From positions 1 through 64,000 of IMG/VR virus record IMGVR_UViG_3300029908_000004: a stretch of DNA of 64,000 bases. One strand, 5' to 3'. The first letter of the stretch is position 1, and each line of letters opens with the position of its first letter. The notes under the pieces are model-generated. The model worked only from the letters and a program-made list of their open reading frames with translations. It did no database searches and was not told the DNA's origin. This document shows, in pieces, positions 37,030 to 59,688 of this stretch. The position numbers and the translations under genes are program-made.

Positions 37030-37056
37030 ATTTTCCTTCCCTGTGTTAAGTCATAC

Positions 37057-37191
37057 GGATATAGTTTGAACAAGATGTTTTTCGATGCTACCATTACACC
37101 AAGCTGGCATAAATTATTAAATGGTGCCAGCCCTGGGATTTGAACCCAGACCCGTTCGTTATGAGTGAAGATAACCTTGCTCTGTCGACCC
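37057..37191 (-). ncRNA. YrlA-like Y RNA 1 (permuted tRNA-like domain)
   Basis: GGGTCGA-N8-GGTTATC, then T arm CTGGG-TTCAAAT-CCCAG, acceptor GGCTGGC/GCCAGCT closed by a loop, D arm GTGT-AATGGTA-GCAT, and 3' CTTGTTCAAACTATATCC pairing with the 5' end. Confidence 0.85.
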
Positions 37192-37214
37192 GTATGATTT
37201 GAATTTAATGATGA

Positions 37215-37348
37215 GGATATGGGGTGGAATTGGGTAAGCCTTTCGGCTGACGGATGTTCTACCATTTGAACTACATCCACTCGATTGAATGGAAGATTGG
37301 ACTCGAACCAATAACATTCTGTTTGAGATAACCAATTTCTATCGACCC
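37215..37348 (-). ncRNA. YrlA-like Y RNA 2
   Basis: GGGTCGA-N8-GGTTATC; ATTGG-TTCGAGT-CCAAT; acceptor hairpin; GTTC-AAATGGTA-GAAC; 3' CCAATT...ATATCC. Confidence 0.85.
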
Positions 37349-37359
37349 TCATCTAATAC

Positions 37360-50667: not shown

Positions 50668-50709
50668 ATGTAGCTCCTTTTAATGTTTGGAACTATTTAT
50701 TCATCTCTC

Positions 50710-50784
50710 GGATATGGATTGACAAAGGTATTGCCTGCACGCAGGCTGTCATTTTAATTGTAGATAACCTTTATACTTCGACCC
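50710..50784 (-). ncRNA. Short Y-RNA-family member
   Basis: GGGTCGA-N8-GGTTATC...CCTTTGTCAATCCATATCC; ends pair. Confidence 0.8.
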
Positions 50785-50802
50785 GAGATTCTTTGTTGCT
50801 TA

Positions 50803-50904
50803 AGATGTAGATTGATAAGGGAATGCCTTTTCCCGAGATGGATCCGGGAACCACTGTAGGCAACAGCTAGCTTGCGCTTTTAGATAACCCTTGTCGTTCG
50901 ACCC
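50803..50904 (-). ncRNA. Y-RNA-family member
   Basis: GGGTCGA-N8-GGTTATC...CCCTTATCAATCTACATCT. Confidence 0.8.
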
Positions 50905-50926
50905 TAAGCGGAATTTATATTGTTAT

Positions 50927-51026
50927 GGATATGGATTGATAAGGTTATGCCTTATTTGGGTATCGAAACCCGCTGCAGGCGACAGTTAGACTTTCGTCCA
51001 TCCAGATAATCCTCGTCGGTCGACCC
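50927..51026 (-). ncRNA. Y-RNA-family member with a T-loop-like hairpin
   Basis: GGGTCGA-N8-GATTATC...GGGTTTCGATACCC...CCTTATCAATCCATATCC. Confidence 0.8.
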
Positions 51027-51044
51027 ATAACAAAGTTGTTAAAA

Positions 51045-51944: not shown

Positions 51945-52284
51945 ACGTCGTGCTTTCCTATTTAGTATACCACCAAATGTTGGAAAACACTAGAATCTTT
52001 AATCTCTTTCTCTTTCTCTTTCGCGACTCAACGCCTTCTGTTCGCGAGACCACCAGAACTTCCATGAAACACTTCTACCATCGTAGTACCAGCCAAGCGC
52101 TTTCAAACGTTCGTACGTTTCTGGTGAGGTTCCTGTCTTCTTAAGTTCTTCTGGCATTTTCTTTTCCTCATCTTGGGATTTTAGTGGAGTAGCCCGGCTA
52201 TCCGCGTCGGGCTACCCCGGTTAATTTGATGTCAAACCTAAATGGTTTTAACAAATTACGGTAGTTGTATAAACACGTGTCTGG

Positions 52285-52465
52285 AACTACGATTGTTTAC
52301 GTTAATCTCGGTGCTTTACCATTGAGCTACTCAGGCATATGTTTTGGGGCCCGAGGAGAGCATCGAACTCTCATACCCGATTTTGAAAGAAATCGTCTAC
52401 CAGATGTTGTTTCTACCAAGTGAACCTCTTGGGTAATAGATTAACGTTAAACTTAATCGTTTATT
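52285..52465 (-). ncRNA. Permuted tRNA-like RNA with a long closing stem and no GGGUCGA motif
   Basis: T arm GAGAG-TTCGATG-CTCTC, CTCGGGC-C-CCA, short linker, GCCTGAG, D arm GCTC-AATGGTA-AAGC; flanks ACGTTAATCT/AGATTAACGT pair. Confidence 0.7.
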
Positions 52466-54974: not shown

Positions 54975-55373
54975 CTATCCATCTATGTTAGTGTTTTGTT
55001 TCTTCTTCCAGTCACGTATTGCAGCCGCTATCGCGTCTTGGGCAAGAACCGAGCAATGAATCTTGACCGGAGGCAGTGACAGCTCTTTCACTATGTCGGT
55101 GTTCTTGATCTGCAGAGCCTCGTCCACCGTCTTGCCTTTTACCCACTCGGTCGCCAGCGATGACGATGCGATCGCCGAGCCGCAGCCGAACGTCTTGAAC
55201 TTCGCGTCCTCGATGATCCTGGTCTGCGGGTTTACCCGGATTTGCAGCTTCATGACGTCGCCGCATTCCGGAGCGCCGACCAGCCCGGTGCCAACCTCAT
55301 CTGCATTCTTGTCCATGGTGCCGACGTTGCGCGGATTGGTGTAGTGATCCAGTACCTTATCGCTGTAAGCCAT
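54975..55373 (-). CDS. iscU: Fe-S cluster scaffold protein IscU/NifU
   Basis: YSDKVLDHYTNPRNVG...GAPECGDVMKLQI...KFKTFGCGSAIASSS...LPPVKIHCSVLA. Confidence 0.97.
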   Translation of the reverse strand: MAYSDKVLDHYTNPRNVGTMDKNADEVGTGLVGAPECGDVMKLQIRVNPQTRIIEDAKFKTFGCGSAIASSSLATEWVKGKTVDEALQIKNTDIVKELSLPPVKIHCSVLAQDAIAAAIRDWKKKQNTNIDG

Positions 55374-56986: not shown

Positions 56987-58687
56987 TTACTCCGCTTCTG
57001 CTTCTTCAGTTTCCAATACTTCCGTTTTCCCTGAAACGAATTGGGCAATCAACGAAGGCACATTGGTATCGAATCCAACCACGTCCAACGAACGTACATC
57101 GTTTGGATCTGCGATCGAGAATCCAGTTGCTGTCATCCCGATGACAATCTGATGAGCGTTACGTCCAGAACTCTGACGATAGCTCTCCAAAGCGCTAAAT
57201 ACGTGTTTAGGTCCTGCCCAAGTCTCGTTGTCAGTGATGTTGACAAACACATCGACTGGCATCTTCTTTTCTTGTGCATCCTTATATGGAAGTGAACAAT
57301 CTGTTCCTCCCCACCCTGTGCGTAGTGCCTTGGATATTGCTGCGTCTAGCTTCATGGATTTAACCAATCCAACATCAATCATCTTGGTGTTGTAGGAAGC
57401 AACGTGATGCCATGGCTCATTATGCATGATTACCATAGCCATTGCTACTGCACCCATGATTGGTGACATGTTTGGACAACCAACAAGATTTCCCCATCCC
57501 ATTGAGCCGGAACAATCCAAGCCAATGTAATAGTTCAAATTGGTGGTTTCAGCATTCTTAAACGTCTTATAGAACGCTGCGTCCATAGCATCCAAAACTG
57601 GTTTCACCACTGTCCAAGTCAACGAGCCACGAATGCCATGACCAGTTTGATAGGTTAACATAGCATTCAGAACAGTTAGTGGGTGAACACGACTACGTTG
57701 CAGATATTCCTGATCCGACAGACGTGTTACTACTAGCTTTGACGCCTCTGATAGAGGAGCTAACAGCTTGATGCTACTCATCTTACCAAGGTTCCTGATC
57801 ATTGCGTTCATGGGCATTTTCTGAAGCAATGCCTCCCAAACTGCAACGTGGTTCAATGCCTCTGTAGGGATCATTTCGCGAGTGAGGTTGTACTTCTGAA
57901 TCGCTGAAATGATTACCTTTGGGTCTTTTTCATTCTTCATTGCCTCGAACTGCTTAATCAGTTCTGGCAAGTCCTTCTCTAAATCGGTTGCTCCGTGCAG
58001 ACCTTTGGTAGCCCAATCAAACAAGGCTTTCTGCCCATTCGACAACGTAGCATGGGTACCTGCATGGGTGGCACGAAGGATGTCGCGATGGCTCCATCCT
58101 TGTGTTCCATCCACACGCCGTGATTGGTATTTCACCATCTGATAAGCCAGTTTCTGCTCATCTTTCTGTGTGTACCAATCTGCTACGCCGTTGCGTAGTG
58201 ACCTATTCCAACGCATCTTTGCGGCACCTTCGGCCTGTTTTGACCGCATGCCTTTCAGATATTCCATTAGTTGGAACAAATGCGTTCCGATACGTGCTAC
58301 GTCTGGCAGTTTATCCAAGGCGTAACCACGAGTGGATTTGTCACCGAATGCTATACACTGTGCCAACGCGAACAGGGCATAGTCATTCTTTGGAGCCCGG
58401 CCAGATACAGAGATATCGACAATCGTTTTTACTGTCTTCTCTCCATCTGCCGAAATACAGCGTTCAACGCACTTTGCGTTGTCACGCGTCAACTTGTCGG
58501 CACCAACATAATAAGTGCCACCTTCGCTTCCAAGAATTATAAATCTCTGGAGTCGGTCCCAGTCACTCAGTTCAAAAACATAACCTCCAGCGTTATTCTG
58601 AACTTGATTCTTTTCTGGGAATGGTTCACTTTGAGGAATTGTTGGCTTCATCGCCCCATACACATTTGTTAGGTTGGGTTTCTTCAT
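56987..58687 (-). CDS. rsr: Ro60/Rsr TROVE-domain RNA-binding protein with a vWA domain
   Basis: QVQNNAGGYVF...DRLQRFIILGSEGGTYY...KYQSR..GWSHRDILRATH...MIRNLGKMS...SRVHPL...LDCSGSM...GGTDCSLP...TDNETW...VVGFDTNVP. Confidence 0.96.
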   Translation of the reverse strand: MKKPNLTNVYGAMKPTIPQSEPFPEKNQVQNNAGGYVFELSDWDRLQRFIILGSEGGTYYVGADKLTRDNAKCVERCISADGEKTVKTIVDISVSGRAPKNDYALFALAQCIAFGDKSTRGYALDKLPDVARIGTHLFQLMEYLKGMRSKQAEGAAKMRWNRSLRNGVADWYTQKDEQKLAYQMVKYQSRRVDGTQGWSHRDILRATHAGTHATLSNGQKALFDWATKGLHGATDLEKDLPELIKQFEAMKNEKDPKVIISAIQKYNLTREMIPTEALNHVAVWEALLQKMPMNAMIRNLGKMSSIKLLAPLSEASKLVVTRLSDQEYLQRSRVHPLTVLNAMLTYQTGHGIRGSLTWTVVKPVLDAMDAAFYKTFKNAETTNLNYYIGLDCSGSMGWGNLVGCPNMSPIMGAVAMAMVIMHNEPWHHVASYNTKMIDVGLVKSMKLDAAISKALRTGWGGTDCSLPYKDAQEKKMPVDVFVNITDNETWAGPKHVFSALESYRQSSGRNAHQIVIGMTATGFSIADPNDVRSLDVVGFDTNVPSLIAQFVSGKTEVLETEEAEAE

Positions 58688-58771: not shown

Positions 58772-58930
58772 TTAAGAACGATTTTCTTTGGTGAGCAGCT
58801 GGGCAACCGTTTCCAGTGAATTGAAGCTTGGGACGTGGGCGTCTGGAGGCGCTGGGTGCAAACCCTTTGCCACAGCCGTCATCTCCTCACGCAACGATTT
58901 CAGCGATTGAATTTTCAACTTGCTCGTCAT
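58772..58930 (-). pseudogene. Truncated bacterial HTH regulator (HVO_A0114/MarR-like N-terminus)
   Basis: MTSKLKIQSLKSLREEMTAVAKGLHPAPPDAHVPSFNSLETVAQLLTKENRS*; stops before the HTH. Confidence 0.5.
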
Positions 58931-58940
58931 CCTACACCCC

Positions 58941-58993
58941 GGATATGATGTTGCATAGGGTTTGTTGTCAAGGTAACCCTACGCGTTCGACCC
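58941..58993 (-). ncRNA. Minimal Y-RNA-family member (53 nt)
   Basis: GGGTCGA-N8-GGTTACC...CCCTATGCAACATCATATCC. Confidence 0.75.
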
Positions 58994-59014
58994 GTGGTCG
59001 AATTTTGTTGCTAT

Positions 59015-59076
59015 GGATATAATACGATTGAAGGCGTTTTTATCTGCAATGATTGATAACCTTCATTCTTCGACCC
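59015..59076 (-). ncRNA. Minimal Y-RNA-family member
   Basis: GGGTCGA-N8-GGTTATC...CCTTCAATCGTATTATATCC. Confidence 0.75.
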
Positions 59077-59096
59077 ATAGCCGATATTAATAGAGT

Positions 59097-59164
59097 GGAT
59101 ATAAACAACTTTGCTGGGATATTGTTTAAATTAGCAGTTTAAGGTAACCCAACGATCTCGACCC
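59097..59164 (-). ncRNA. Minimal Y-RNA-family member
   Basis: GGGTCGA-N8-GGTTACC...CCCAGCAAAGTTGTTTATATCC. Confidence 0.75.
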
Positions 59165-59331
59165 ACTCCATGATTTGATGGTGGAAAGAGGTATTGTATG
59201 TTTGGCCCAACACCGGCCTAGATATATCCGCAGTGCTGGTTTCCTCTCTTACAAATTACCTAGTTCTAGGCACCAAATAACCGTAAGCCACCAAACTTTA
59301 TTACTTCGTTTCAAAATCTTTAATATCTAGT

Positions 59332-59452
59332 AGATATAAATTTGACTGGATGTTTTAGAGTGTCCTGCCAATTAGACGATGCCGGTTACCCGGTAGAGAG
59401 ATTCGAACTCCCATAACCCGCTCCATAGGCGATAACCCAATCGGGTCGACCC
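59332..59452 (-). ncRNA. YrlA-like Y RNA 3
   Basis: GGGTCGA-N8-GGTTATC; GGGAG-TTCGAAT-CTCTC; acceptor hairpin ACCGG-GTAA-CCGG; D arm GTCT-AATTGGC-AGGAC; 3' ATATCT. Confidence 0.85.
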
Positions 59453-59502
59453 ACTAGATAAATTCATTTGCTCCCTAGGAGCGCTTTACATTCTTATGGT
59501 GT

Positions 59503-59565
59503 GGATATAAACAACTTAGTCAGGAAGTTTATCAAAGTAATAAGGTAATCCTAACTATTCGACCC
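59503..59565 (-). ncRNA. Minimal Y-RNA-family member
   Basis: GGGTCGA-N8-GATTACC...CCTGACTAAGTTGTTTATATCC; shares its 3' 17 nt with the 59097 copy. Confidence 0.75.
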
Positions 59566-59688
59566 AAACCATTTCCTATGCGAGGAGCAATAACAATATA
59601 ATAAAGAGAACTGGGTGAAGGTTCCAGAAAGCCAGAATTAGTGCTCCCTTTCCTAGTAGGGCAAGTAGAATTAGAATTAATATCATAA

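What the first reader, a model, noticed from the sequence alone, without database searches (positions are those of the whole stretch)
58941..59565. Array of minimal Y RNAs just upstream of ro60
Seen: four elements of 53-68 nt consist of little more than the conserved helix and a small loop, and they are interleaved with one full YrlA. Two share an identical 17-nt 3' segment (GTGGATATAAACAACTT on the plus strand), which suggests recent duplication. Inference: minimal Ro60 ligands could titrate or gate host or phage Ro60, or mark processing sites in a polycistronic transcript.
Basis: partly seen in the sequence, partly recalled or inferred. Interest (0 to 1): 0.62.

Follow-up and report, generated by a model that had tools for sequence, protein, structure and literature searches.

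The report
Phage Y-RNA gene array beside ro60
A 215-kb peat-bog phage carries four short hairpin Y RNAs, one tRNA-like Y RNA and one unknown structured RNA just upstream of its Ro60 gene, plus five more Y-RNA genes further away; these are new, unusually numerous members of the known bacterial and phage Y-RNA family.

Summary
On the minus strand, 58936-59572 holds four short elements (63-78 nt), one 135-nt YrlA-type element and one unrelated conserved structured RNA. They lie 248-885 nt upstream of an intact Ro60 gene (56987-58687).

Each short element has three parts:
- a 9-bp basal helix whose 5' strand ends in GGGUCGA
- an 8-bp upper stem
- a loop that starts with UUAYC

A covariance model of these elements hits Ro60 loci widely. 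All 186 hits lie on the ro60 strand. In 101 bacterial genomes, 21 of 25 with a TROVE (Ro60) gene have a hit and 0 of 76 without one do. 37 of the 38 hits lie within 1.7 kb of ro60. Pairing is 91%, with compensatory changes at every pair.

So these are YrlB-like short Y RNAs. They amount to the Ro60-binding module of YrlA without its tRNA-like domain.

The phage has ten such genes in three clusters, the others at 50.7-51.0 kb and 37.05-37.35 kb. This is at the top of the range seen, but arrays are common. Mycobacteriophage Catera has an unannotated short-long-short array.

Binding, processing and function are inferred, not shown. The "recent duplication" idea is not supported.

Verdict: new member of a known kind, of moderate interest.

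The parts
56987..58687 (-). ro60 (566 aa, TROVE + Ro60 vWA domains), intact
   Evidence: Pfam TROVE E=1.3e-39 and vWA_Ro60 E=2.3e-47. PDB matches: human RO60 9nen E=7e-109, Xenopus 1yvp E=2e-104, D. radiodurans Rsr 2nvo E=1e-95.
58772..58930 (-). 52-aa ORF between the array and ro60. It is probably a small inserted gene, not part of the Y-RNA system.
   Evidence: No Pfam or PHROG match. Its only homologue (68% identity, 54 aa) lies in a bacterial contig with no Ro60. It is absent at this position in relatives L002 and L003.
58936..58998 (-). Short Y RNA E (63 nt). Motif GUCGAACG, loop begins UUACC. Its 3' end is 5 nt from the ATG of the 52-aa ORF.
   Evidence: R1 63.9 bits, R2 57.1 bits.
59010..59081 (-). 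Short Y RNA D (72 nt). Motif GUCGAAG, loop begins UUAUC.
   Evidence: R2 56.9 bits. Fold z-score -3.5.
59092..59169 (-). Short Y RNA C (78 nt). Motif GUCGAG, loop begins UUACC. Shares a 17-nt 3' block with A.
   Evidence: R2 50.4 bits. 17-mer located.
59178..59295 (-). U: conserved structured RNA of unknown class, predicted as a three-way junction. It lacks the Ro60 motif.
   Evidence: It sits at the same place in the array of relative L002 (3701-3839). The two copies share a 22-nt invariant block, and 5 of 25 predicted pairs show compensatory changes. There is no Rfam match. Model R3 finds it nowhere else in 88 sources.
59325..59459 (-). Long Y RNA B (135 nt), YrlA type: basal helix with GGGUCGA, second stem, UUAUC, T-arm, closed acceptor-like hairpin, D-arm.
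   Evidence: R2 27.7 bits, E=2.7e-4. Fold. Aligns with the L002 orthologue. Not detected by Rfam YrlA RF02553.
59496..59572 (-). Short Y RNA A (77 nt), beginning 3 nt after the stop codon of the small upstream ORF.
   Evidence: R2 57.5 bits. Weak Rfam YrlB match, 16.6 bits. Fold z-score -3.1.
59576..59686 (-). 36-aa hydrophobic ORF directly upstream of the array. It is likely part of the same transcript.
   Evidence: Read from the sequence. No family match.
50705..51031 (-). Second cluster: Y-like RNAs F (50922-51031, 110 nt), G (50798-50909, 112 nt) and H (50705-50789, 85 nt).
   Evidence: R2 39.0, 38.2 and 47.5 bits. Folds.
37052..37353 (-). Third cluster: two YrlA-type RNAs, I (37210-37353) and J (37052-37196), each with T-arm, acceptor-like hairpin and D-arm.
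   Evidence: R2 33.1 and 35.9 bits. Folds, z-score -4.3 for J. Rfam YrlA gives a partial 26.6-bit match to I.

Best explanation
The stretch 58936-59572 (minus strand) is a cluster of Y-RNA genes. It is most likely transcribed together with the downstream ro60 gene and cut into separate small RNAs.

Shown here:
- Each short RNA (A, C, D, E) carries only the Ro60-binding module: a 9-bp basal helix whose 5' strand ends in GGGUCGA, an asymmetric internal loop, an 8-bp stem, and the invariant UUAYC at the start of an A/U-rich loop of 16-29 nt.
- B adds a tRNA-like domain and is of the YrlA type.
- The elements belong to a Ro60-linked RNA family.
- Their structure is supported by covariation.
- They lie on the same strand as ro60.

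Inferred by homology with characterised Y RNAs:
- Each RNA binds one phage Ro60 ring through the GGGUCGA strand.

Inferred without direct evidence:
- The RNAs are processed from one precursor.
- The phage makes several different Ro60 particles. In the short-RNA particles the RNA gates the ring, or presents its A/U-rich loop to a host single-strand RNA-binding nuclease. Host PNPase is the likeliest candidate, because the phage has none of its own.
- The YrlA-type particles engage a tRNA-binding factor.
For: Family membership and specificity:
- Model R1, built from the 4 window elements and 3 elements of relative L002, gave 79 hits in 99 Ro60 loci. All lie on the ro60 strand.
- The broader model R2 gave 186 hits, again all on the ro60 strand.
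- Among 101 genomes of one bacterial phylum, 21 of 25 with a TROVE gene have an R2 hit and 0 of 76 without one do (Fisher p=5e-18). 37 of 38 hits lie within 1.7 kb of ro60 on its strand.

Structure:
- 91.4% of cells are paired and all 17 pairs show double changes, against 32-46% paired in slid controls.
- In the MAFFT-only alignment, the basal helix is 96.8% paired and 7 of 9 pairs show double changes.

Motifs:
- The CG of GNCGA, and the UUA and C of UUAYC, are invariant in 44 of 44 sequences.
- These correspond to the GNCGAAN0-1G and YUAY motifs described for bacterial Y RNAs (PMC4201824).

Partner protein: Ro60 is intact and full length.

Conservation: a syntenic array lies upstream of a 72%-identical Ro60 in L002.

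Transcription unit:
- Spacers between elements are 8-36 nt.
- No terminator-like or promoter-like site was found on this strand inside the array.
- Exact-match contigs from three peat metatranscriptome studies bridge neighbouring elements.

Precedents:
- M. smegmatis YrlA and YrlB lie upstream of rsr and are cut from one precursor (PMC4201824).
- Thermus phage phiLo Ro60 binds two upstream Y-like RNAs, and a complex forms with host PNPase (PMC12135203).

The phage has no RNase PH-domain gene, and hence no PNPase, and no RtcB.
Against: - There is no direct evidence of Ro60 binding, of discrete 60-80-nt RNA species, or of any effector.
- The metatranscriptome data are assembled contigs. They cannot show RNA ends or strand, and DNA carry-over is not excluded.
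- Rfam YrlA and YrlB models do not reach their gathering scores.
- The exact GNCGAAN0-1G motif is met by only D and E in this array. A, B and C have GUCGA followed by other bases.
- Five of the ten elements lie 6-20 kb from ro60, outside the usual definition of a Y-RNA locus.
- The host, and whether it has PNPase or its own Ro60, is unknown.
Confidence: 0.72

Rival explanations
1. The array is a cis-acting leader. The elements stay in the ro60 mRNA as Ro60-binding sites, and Ro60 uses them to regulate its own translation or mRNA stability. They would not be free small RNAs.
For: - The array lies directly upstream of ro60 on the same strand, with no terminator-like site in between.
- Element E ends 5 nt before an ATG.
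- In relatives L002 and L003 the last element ends 8-16 nt before the ro60 ATG.
- Metatranscriptome contigs join elements to neighbouring sequence.
Against: - Five elements of the same family lie 6-20 kb away and are not upstream of ro60.
- In some bacteria the elements lie downstream of ro60.
- Characterised homologues are stable, processed RNAs (PMC4201824).
- Contigs cannot distinguish a precursor from its products.
Confidence: 0.12
2. The short RNAs are decoys aimed at the host. They soak up host Ro60 (Rsr), or a host nuclease that recognises the UUAYC or A/U-rich loop, and so disable host RNA quality control.
For: - Copy number is high: ten genes.
- The minimal form keeps only the binding module.
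- The phage lacks PNPase and RtcB, so any enzymatic partner must come from the host.
Against: - The phage encodes its own intact Ro60 next to the array.
- The same short RNAs accompany ro60 in bacterial genomes, where a decoy role makes no sense.
- The host is unknown.
Confidence: 0.1
3. The elements are non-functional repeats, either decayed tRNA-derived or REP-like sequences or chance hairpins in an A/T-rich intergenic region.
For: - The region lies in a tRNA-rich island.
- Rfam finds no Y RNA at gathering thresholds.
- The GGGTCGA heptamer alone is not over-represented in the genome.
Against: - Co-occurrence with Ro60 is strict (p=5e-18).
- All 186 hits lie on the ro60 strand.
- Compensatory changes occur at every pair.
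- Loop motifs are invariant.
- There is a clean score gap between the ten elements and background.
Confidence: 0.02

Closest known systems
YrlB of Salmonella Typhimurium (Rfam RF02565) and YrlB of Mycobacterium smegmatis
   Same: - They are short Ro60-bound hairpin RNAs encoded next to rsr together with a YrlA.
- The Rfam YrlB consensus printed has the same layout: basal helix, GCGAA, stem, loop starting UUAC, and a U-rich 3' internal loop.
- M. smegmatis YrlA and YrlB lie upstream of rsr and come from one precursor (PMC4201824).
   Different: - Sequence similarity is too low for the Rfam model: 16.6 bits against a gathering score of 97.
- There are four copies in one array here, against one per species in those bacteria.
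- M. smegmatis YrlB is reported to have a possible T-arm, which these elements lack.
YrlA (Rfam RF02553; Chen et al. 2014, PMC4201824; structure preprint 10.1101/312249)
   Same: - Elements B, I and J have the Ro60-binding module followed by T-arm, closed acceptor-like hairpin and D-arm.
- The short elements equal the YrlA Ro60-binding module plus the conserved YUAY.
   Different: - None reaches the Rfam gathering score. The best is 26.6 bits against 69, and B is not detected at all.
- The short elements lack the tRNA-like domain entirely.
Yrl1 and Yrl2 of Thermus phage phiLo (PMC12135203)
   Same: - They are phage-encoded Y-like RNAs upstream of a phage ro60.
- They have a CGAA motif in an internal loop flanked by a 5'-3' stem.
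- They were shown to bind the phage Ro60, and a complex forms with host PNPase.
   Different: - phiLo has two RNAs; this phage has ten.
- No binding data exist for this phage.
Ro60 locus of Mycobacterium phage Catera and other Bxz1-like phages
   Same: R2 finds a short (75 nt), long (146 nt), short (72 nt) arrangement in the unannotated 485-nt gap upstream of the Ro gene. Short Y RNAs flank a YrlA-type RNA, as here.
   Different: - Catera has three elements near ro60; this array has five plus the extra RNA U.
- Ro60 is only about 40% identical.
- Distal clusters were not looked for in Catera.
Metazoan Y RNAs and nematode stem-bulge RNAs (from general knowledge, not tested here)
   Same: - They have a conserved basal helix whose 5' strand (GGUCCGA in vertebrates) is contacted by Ro60.
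- They form small multigene families with differing loops.
   Different: - Those genes are independently transcribed by RNA polymerase III.
- They have no UUAYC motif and no tRNA-like domain.

Membership tests
Bacterial/phage Y RNA (criteria of Chen et al. 2014) | Encoded within about 4 kb of a Ro60 orthologue, on the same strand | tested here: met
   A-E lie 248-885 nt upstream of the ro60 ATG on the same strand. This is not met by the distal elements: F-H are about 6 kb and I-J about 20 kb from ro60, though on the same strand.
Bacterial/phage Y RNA (criteria of Chen et al. 2014) | GNCGAAN0-1G motif near the 5' end | tested here: inconclusive
   The motif is exact in D (GUCGAAG) and E (GUCGAACG), and also in G and H. 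A, B and C have GUCGA followed by AUAG, CCCG and GAUC. The core CG is invariant in 44 of 44 family members.
Bacterial/phage Y RNA (criteria of Chen et al. 2014) | 5' and 3' ends pair to form a basal helix carrying the motif | tested here: met
   The 9-bp helix is 96.8% paired with 7 of 9 pairs showing double changes in a MAFFT alignment. Pairing is 91-94% in 44 and 150 sequences.
Bacterial/phage Y RNA (criteria of Chen et al. 2014) | Bound by Ro60 in vivo or in vitro | not testable with these tools
   Needs EMSA or RNA immunoprecipitation. The only indirect evidence is strict genomic co-occurrence with TROVE genes.
YrlA | T-arm, closed acceptor-like stem-loop and D-arm in that order, after a conserved YUAY | tested here: met
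   B, I and J show these features by inspection and minimum-free-energy folds. UUAUC is present. Tertiary pairs were not checked.
YrlA | Rfam RF02553 gathering score (69 bits) | tested here: not met
   The best score is 26.6 bits (I, partial match). B is not reported at E<=10. The model scores below its gathering cut-off in every genome searched, including all 14 named control genomes.
YrlB (Rfam RF02565) | Rfam gathering score (97 bits) | tested here: not met
   Only A matches, at 16.6 bits and E=5. BLASTN searches with Salmonella YrlB found orthologues only in other S. enterica serovars (PMC4201824). The architecture agrees but sequence-level membership fails.
Short Ro60-linked hairpin RNA family defined here (model R2) | Basal helix + GNCGA + 8-bp stem + UUAYC at the start of the loop, 60-80 nt | tested here: met
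   A, C, D and E score 50-57 bits. A, C, D and E were among the sequences used to build R1 and R2, so their own scores are partly circular. The independent support is the set of hits in other loci and genomes.

The most novel reading that the evidence does not exclude
The phage uses one Ro60 protein with a repertoire of about ten interchangeable RNA adaptors: four minimal, three intermediate and three tRNA-like, possibly with the unknown RNA U and a motif-less tRNA-like RNA at 52.3 kb. These would form a set of distinct particles, each aimed at a different host RNA-processing enzyme or RNA class. The system sits inside the phage's tRNA island and would act as a virus-encoded, modular RNA-surveillance or RNA-takeover toolkit. 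The invariant UUAYC would be a second, so far uncharacterised contact point shared by all bacterial and phage Y RNAs.
Probability: 0.2. Interest if true: 0.7.

Novelty: new member of a known kind. Interest (0 to 1): 0.45.

Why it matters
Bacterial Y RNAs have been characterised in only a few species, with about two per species. The short, non-tRNA-like class was known from single examples that resisted homology search.

This locus yielded a covariance model that finds short Y RNAs next to Ro60 genes in many phages and bacteria with near-perfect specificity. It shows three things:
- The short form is the most common size class.
- Arrays of three or more elements are frequent.
- A jumbo-sized phage can carry ten.

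This gives a concrete set of RNAs, and two invariant motifs (GNCGA and UUAYC), for testing what phage Ro60 particles do during infection.

Well-studied phages such as Catera carry unannotated Y RNAs that could be tested in a laboratory host.

Tried and rejected
Searches that found nothing or too little:
- Rfam at gathering thresholds found only tRNAs in the window. At E<=10 it gave one weak YrlB match and no YrlA match in the array.
- Megablast of the locus against 50,697 phage records found nothing.
- A single-protein scan of viral contigs found no relative. An alignment-based scan was needed.
- The contig of the closest Ro60 relative (75% identity) has no DNA on file.
- Seven other contigs of the same phage from other samples are 100% identical across the array, so they give no variation to analyse.
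- The genome-contig scan returned only 5 loci.

The unknown RNA U:
- An exact 18-mer of its invariant block is absent from viral contigs.
- Model R3 finds it only in its two training sequences.
- It remains unexplained.

Enzymes sought in the phage:
- RtcB and RNase PH-domain genes were not found.
- For T4 Rnl1-type ligase the control rang nowhere, so that blank says nothing.
- One sub-threshold RNA_ligase match (23 bits) was found at 84.9 kb.

The 52-aa ORF was tested as a possible Ro60 partner and rejected. It has no family match, and its one homologue lies in an unrelated bacterial context.

Limits of the tools and data:
- Two reviews on bacterial Y RNAs (PMC10870794, PMC6047535) are not held.
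- The first look of the genome search misses the long elements, so whole-genome counts of YrlA-type RNAs are lower bounds.
- The reads tool offered only assembled contigs, so RNA ends, strand and processing could not be examined. No silent control stretch could be laid, because only one call was allowed.

Full report
**Where the window comes from.** The window is the first 64 kb of a 215,291-bp IMG/VR virus record, rated complete by CheckV, from a peat or bog metagenome. Its GC content is 41%. All 28 tRNA genes of the window lie on the minus strand. The 566-aa ORF at 56987-58687 is also on the minus strand. It has a TROVE domain (E=1.3e-39) and a Ro60 vWA domain (E=2.3e-47). It aligns over its full length with human RO60, Xenopus Ro60 and D. 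radiodurans Rsr (E=7e-109 to 1e-95). Ro60 is therefore real and intact.

**What is in the flagged stretch.** Reading the minus strand from 59572 down to 58936 gives, in order:
- A: 59572-59496, 77 nt
- a 36-nt spacer containing a small palindromic hairpin
- B: 59459-59325, 135 nt
- U: 59295-59178, an unrelated structured RNA
- C: 59169-59092
- D: 59081-59010
- E: 58998-58936

Spacers are 36, 29, 8, 10 and 11 nt. E ends 5 nt before the ATG of a 52-aa ORF (58930-58772), and ro60 starts at 58687. A starts 3 nt after the stop codon of a 36-aa hydrophobic ORF.

**Anatomy of the short elements.** A, C, D and E share the following parts:
- a 9-bp basal helix formed by the two ends, whose 5' strand ends in GGGU
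- CGA(A) opening an asymmetric internal loop
- an 8-bp upper stem
- an A/U-rich loop of 16-29 nt that always begins UUAYC
- a 3' internal-loop strand ending UAU, just before the AUCC of the basal helix

B has the same 5' and 3' modules. Between them lie a T-arm (5-bp stem, loop UUCGAAU), a closed 4-bp hairpin and a D-arm (loop UAAUUGGCAG). This order defines YrlA (PMC4201824).

The full elements are 63-78 nt rather than 53-68 nt.

**Is it more than chance, and is it linked to Ro60?**

I built covariance model R1 from the four window elements and three elements found upstream of a 72%-identical Ro60 in metagenome contig L002.
- In 99 Ro60 loci fetched from metagenomes and viral contigs (Ro60 33-48% identical), R1 gave 79 hits at E<=1. 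All are on the ro60 strand.

I then rebuilt the model from 44 hits to give R2.
- R2 gave 186 hits at E<=0.01, again all on the ro60 strand.
- With filters off, R2 gives exactly ten hits in the window (27.7-57.5 bits). All are on the minus strand, and background is at or below 13.4 bits.

A whole-genome test that does not depend on how the loci were collected gave the same answer.
- Among 101 genomes of one bacterial phylum, 25 have a TROVE gene.
- 21 of those 25 have an R2 hit at a genome-wide E<=0.01. None of the 76 genomes without TROVE has one (Fisher p=4.9e-18).
- 37 of the 38 hits lie on the ro60 contig and strand within 1.7 kb, 34 of them upstream.

Structure is supported as follows.
- 91.4% of cells are paired and every one of the 17 pairs shows double changes, against 32-46% paired when partners are slid.
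- Those alignments are fitted to the model. The plain MAFFT alignment gives 96.8% pairing for the basal helix, with 7 of 9 pairs covarying.

**What it is.**
- The invariant positions are the CG of GNCGA and the UUA and C of UUAYC, in 44 of 44 sequences.
- They correspond to two motifs already described for bacterial Y RNAs: GNCGAAN0-1G, the likely Ro60 contact resembling vertebrate GGUCCGA, and the conserved YUAY that begins the variable loop of YrlA (PMC4201824).
- The short elements are therefore the Ro60-binding module of YrlA closed by a simple loop. In other words they are YrlB-like short Y RNAs.
- The Rfam YrlB consensus, built from Salmonella, shows the same layout, including a loop starting UUAC. 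It scores only 16.6 bits on A against a gathering score of 97.
- Rfam YrlA does not detect B.
- Membership of the biological family is well supported. Membership of the two Rfam models is not met.

**How unusual is the array?**
- The lengths of the 150 best R2 hits are bimodal: 91 are 60-80 nt and 29 are 130-150 nt. The short form is the commonest size class among these hits.
- 24 of the 64 sources with a hit (63 loci and the window) have three or more. One viral contig (L092) has 9 among these 150 best hits and 13 among all 186 hits at E<=0.01.
- Other 200-kb viral records have 2-5.
- The cultured Mycobacterium phage Catera has a short-long-short trio in the unannotated gap upstream of its Ro gene. 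Gordonia phage Cashline has two long elements.
- The published picture is at least two Y RNAs per species, one tRNA-like and one hairpin, cut from a common precursor (PMC4201824). Two Y-like RNAs lie upstream of the Ro60 of Thermus phage phiLo (PMC12135203).
- This phage is at the top of the range with ten: five beside ro60, three of 85-112 nt at 50705-51031, and two YrlA-type at 37052-37353.
- It is a quantitative extreme of a known arrangement, not a new kind.

**Evolution of the array.**
- In L002 the order is two short elements, YrlA, U, one short element, then ro60. In the window it is one short element, YrlA, U, three short elements, the 52-aa ORF, then ro60. Copy number therefore changes between relatives.
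- The window's short elements are 52-76% identical to each other and to those of L002.
- A and C are the closest pair within the window, at 73%. Their identical 17 nt cover the most constrained segment.
- "Recent duplication" is therefore not supported.

**Transcription.**
- No sigma-70-like promoter or intrinsic terminator was found on the minus strand within the array. One weak promoter-like site lies at 59772-59744.
- Seventeen peat or permafrost metatranscriptome runs from 16 studies hold parts of the 3.2-kb stretch.
- In the four runs that were laid, exact-match contigs cover ro60 and bridge neighbouring elements: 59228-59533, 59114-59443, 59374-59602 and 58782-58988.
- This fits a polycistronic precursor. 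However, these are contigs, so ends and strand are unknown and DNA carry-over is not excluded.

**Likely mechanism.**
- Shown: family membership, structure, and linkage and co-orientation with an intact ro60.
- Inferred from characterised homologues: each RNA binds a Ro60 ring through the GGGUCGA strand, and the RNAs are cut from a common transcript.
- Inferred more loosely: the short RNAs gate the ring or present their A/U-rich loops to a host single-strand RNA-binding nuclease. The phage lacks RNase PH-domain genes (and so PNPase) and RtcB, and it has a CCA-adding enzyme at 74.4 kb. The YrlA-type RNAs would engage a tRNA-binding factor.
- The main rival is that the array acts in cis as a Ro60-responsive leader. 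The distal clusters, and bacterial loci with the RNAs downstream of ro60, argue against it.

**Unexplained.** U (59178-59295) is conserved in L002, including a 22-nt invariant block and compensatory changes in its predicted three-way junction. It has no Rfam match and no other relative in the loci searched.

**Verdict.** The finding is a real feature and is correctly recognised as minimal Y RNAs beside a YrlA. It is a new, copy-rich member of the known bacterial and phage Y-RNA kind. Function is untested.

Noticed in passing
window 59178-59295 (-); L002 3701-3839: A conserved structured RNA (U) lies between the YrlA-type element and the downstream short Y RNAs. Its predicted three-way junction shows compensatory changes and includes a 22-nt block identical in two phages whose Ro60 proteins are 72% identical. 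It has no Ro60 motif, no Rfam match and no other relative found.
   Followed up: partly
window 50705-51031 (-) and 37052-37353 (-): Two further clusters of Y-RNA-like genes lie in the tRNA island: three of 85-112 nt, and two YrlA-type of about 145 nt. They are 6 and 20 kb from ro60, beyond the 4-kb limit used in published Y-RNA searches.
   Followed up: yes
window 52272-52405 (-): A permuted tRNA-like RNA (T-arm, closed acceptor-like hairpin, D-arm) is enclosed by two helices. It gives the best Rfam YrlA score in the genome (26.6 bits, below cut-off). It lacks GGGUCGA and UUAYC and is not hit by R2. It may be a divergent Y RNA.
   Followed up: partly
window 58772-58930 (-): A 52-aa ORF lies between the array and ro60. 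It is absent at this position in relatives. Its only homologue (68% identity) is in a bacterial contig with no Ro60.
   Followed up: partly
L126 2559-2906 (Mycobacterium phage Catera NC_008207, about 126976-127323): Three R2 hits (short, long, short) fill the unannotated gap between gp222 and the Ro gene gp223. The record annotates no RNA gene there.
   Followed up: partly
window 24058-60032 (-): 28 tRNA genes, all on one strand, are interspersed with small ORFs that have no family match. The Y-RNA clusters are embedded in this island. A CCA-adding enzyme gene lies outside the window at G000 74375-74752 (-).
   Followed up: no
window 54975-55373 (-): A 132-aa ORF about 1.6 kb downstream of ro60 carries a NifU_N (Fe-S scaffold) domain according to the precomputed Pfam hits for the same contig (L005 6315-6713).
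   Followed up: no
L003/L013 161-265: In a relative whose Ro60 is 70% identical, the element directly upstream of ro60 is an intermediate form of 105 nt. It has a T-arm-like hairpin and a D-arm-like sequence. This suggests that short and tRNA-like forms interconvert.
   Followed up: no
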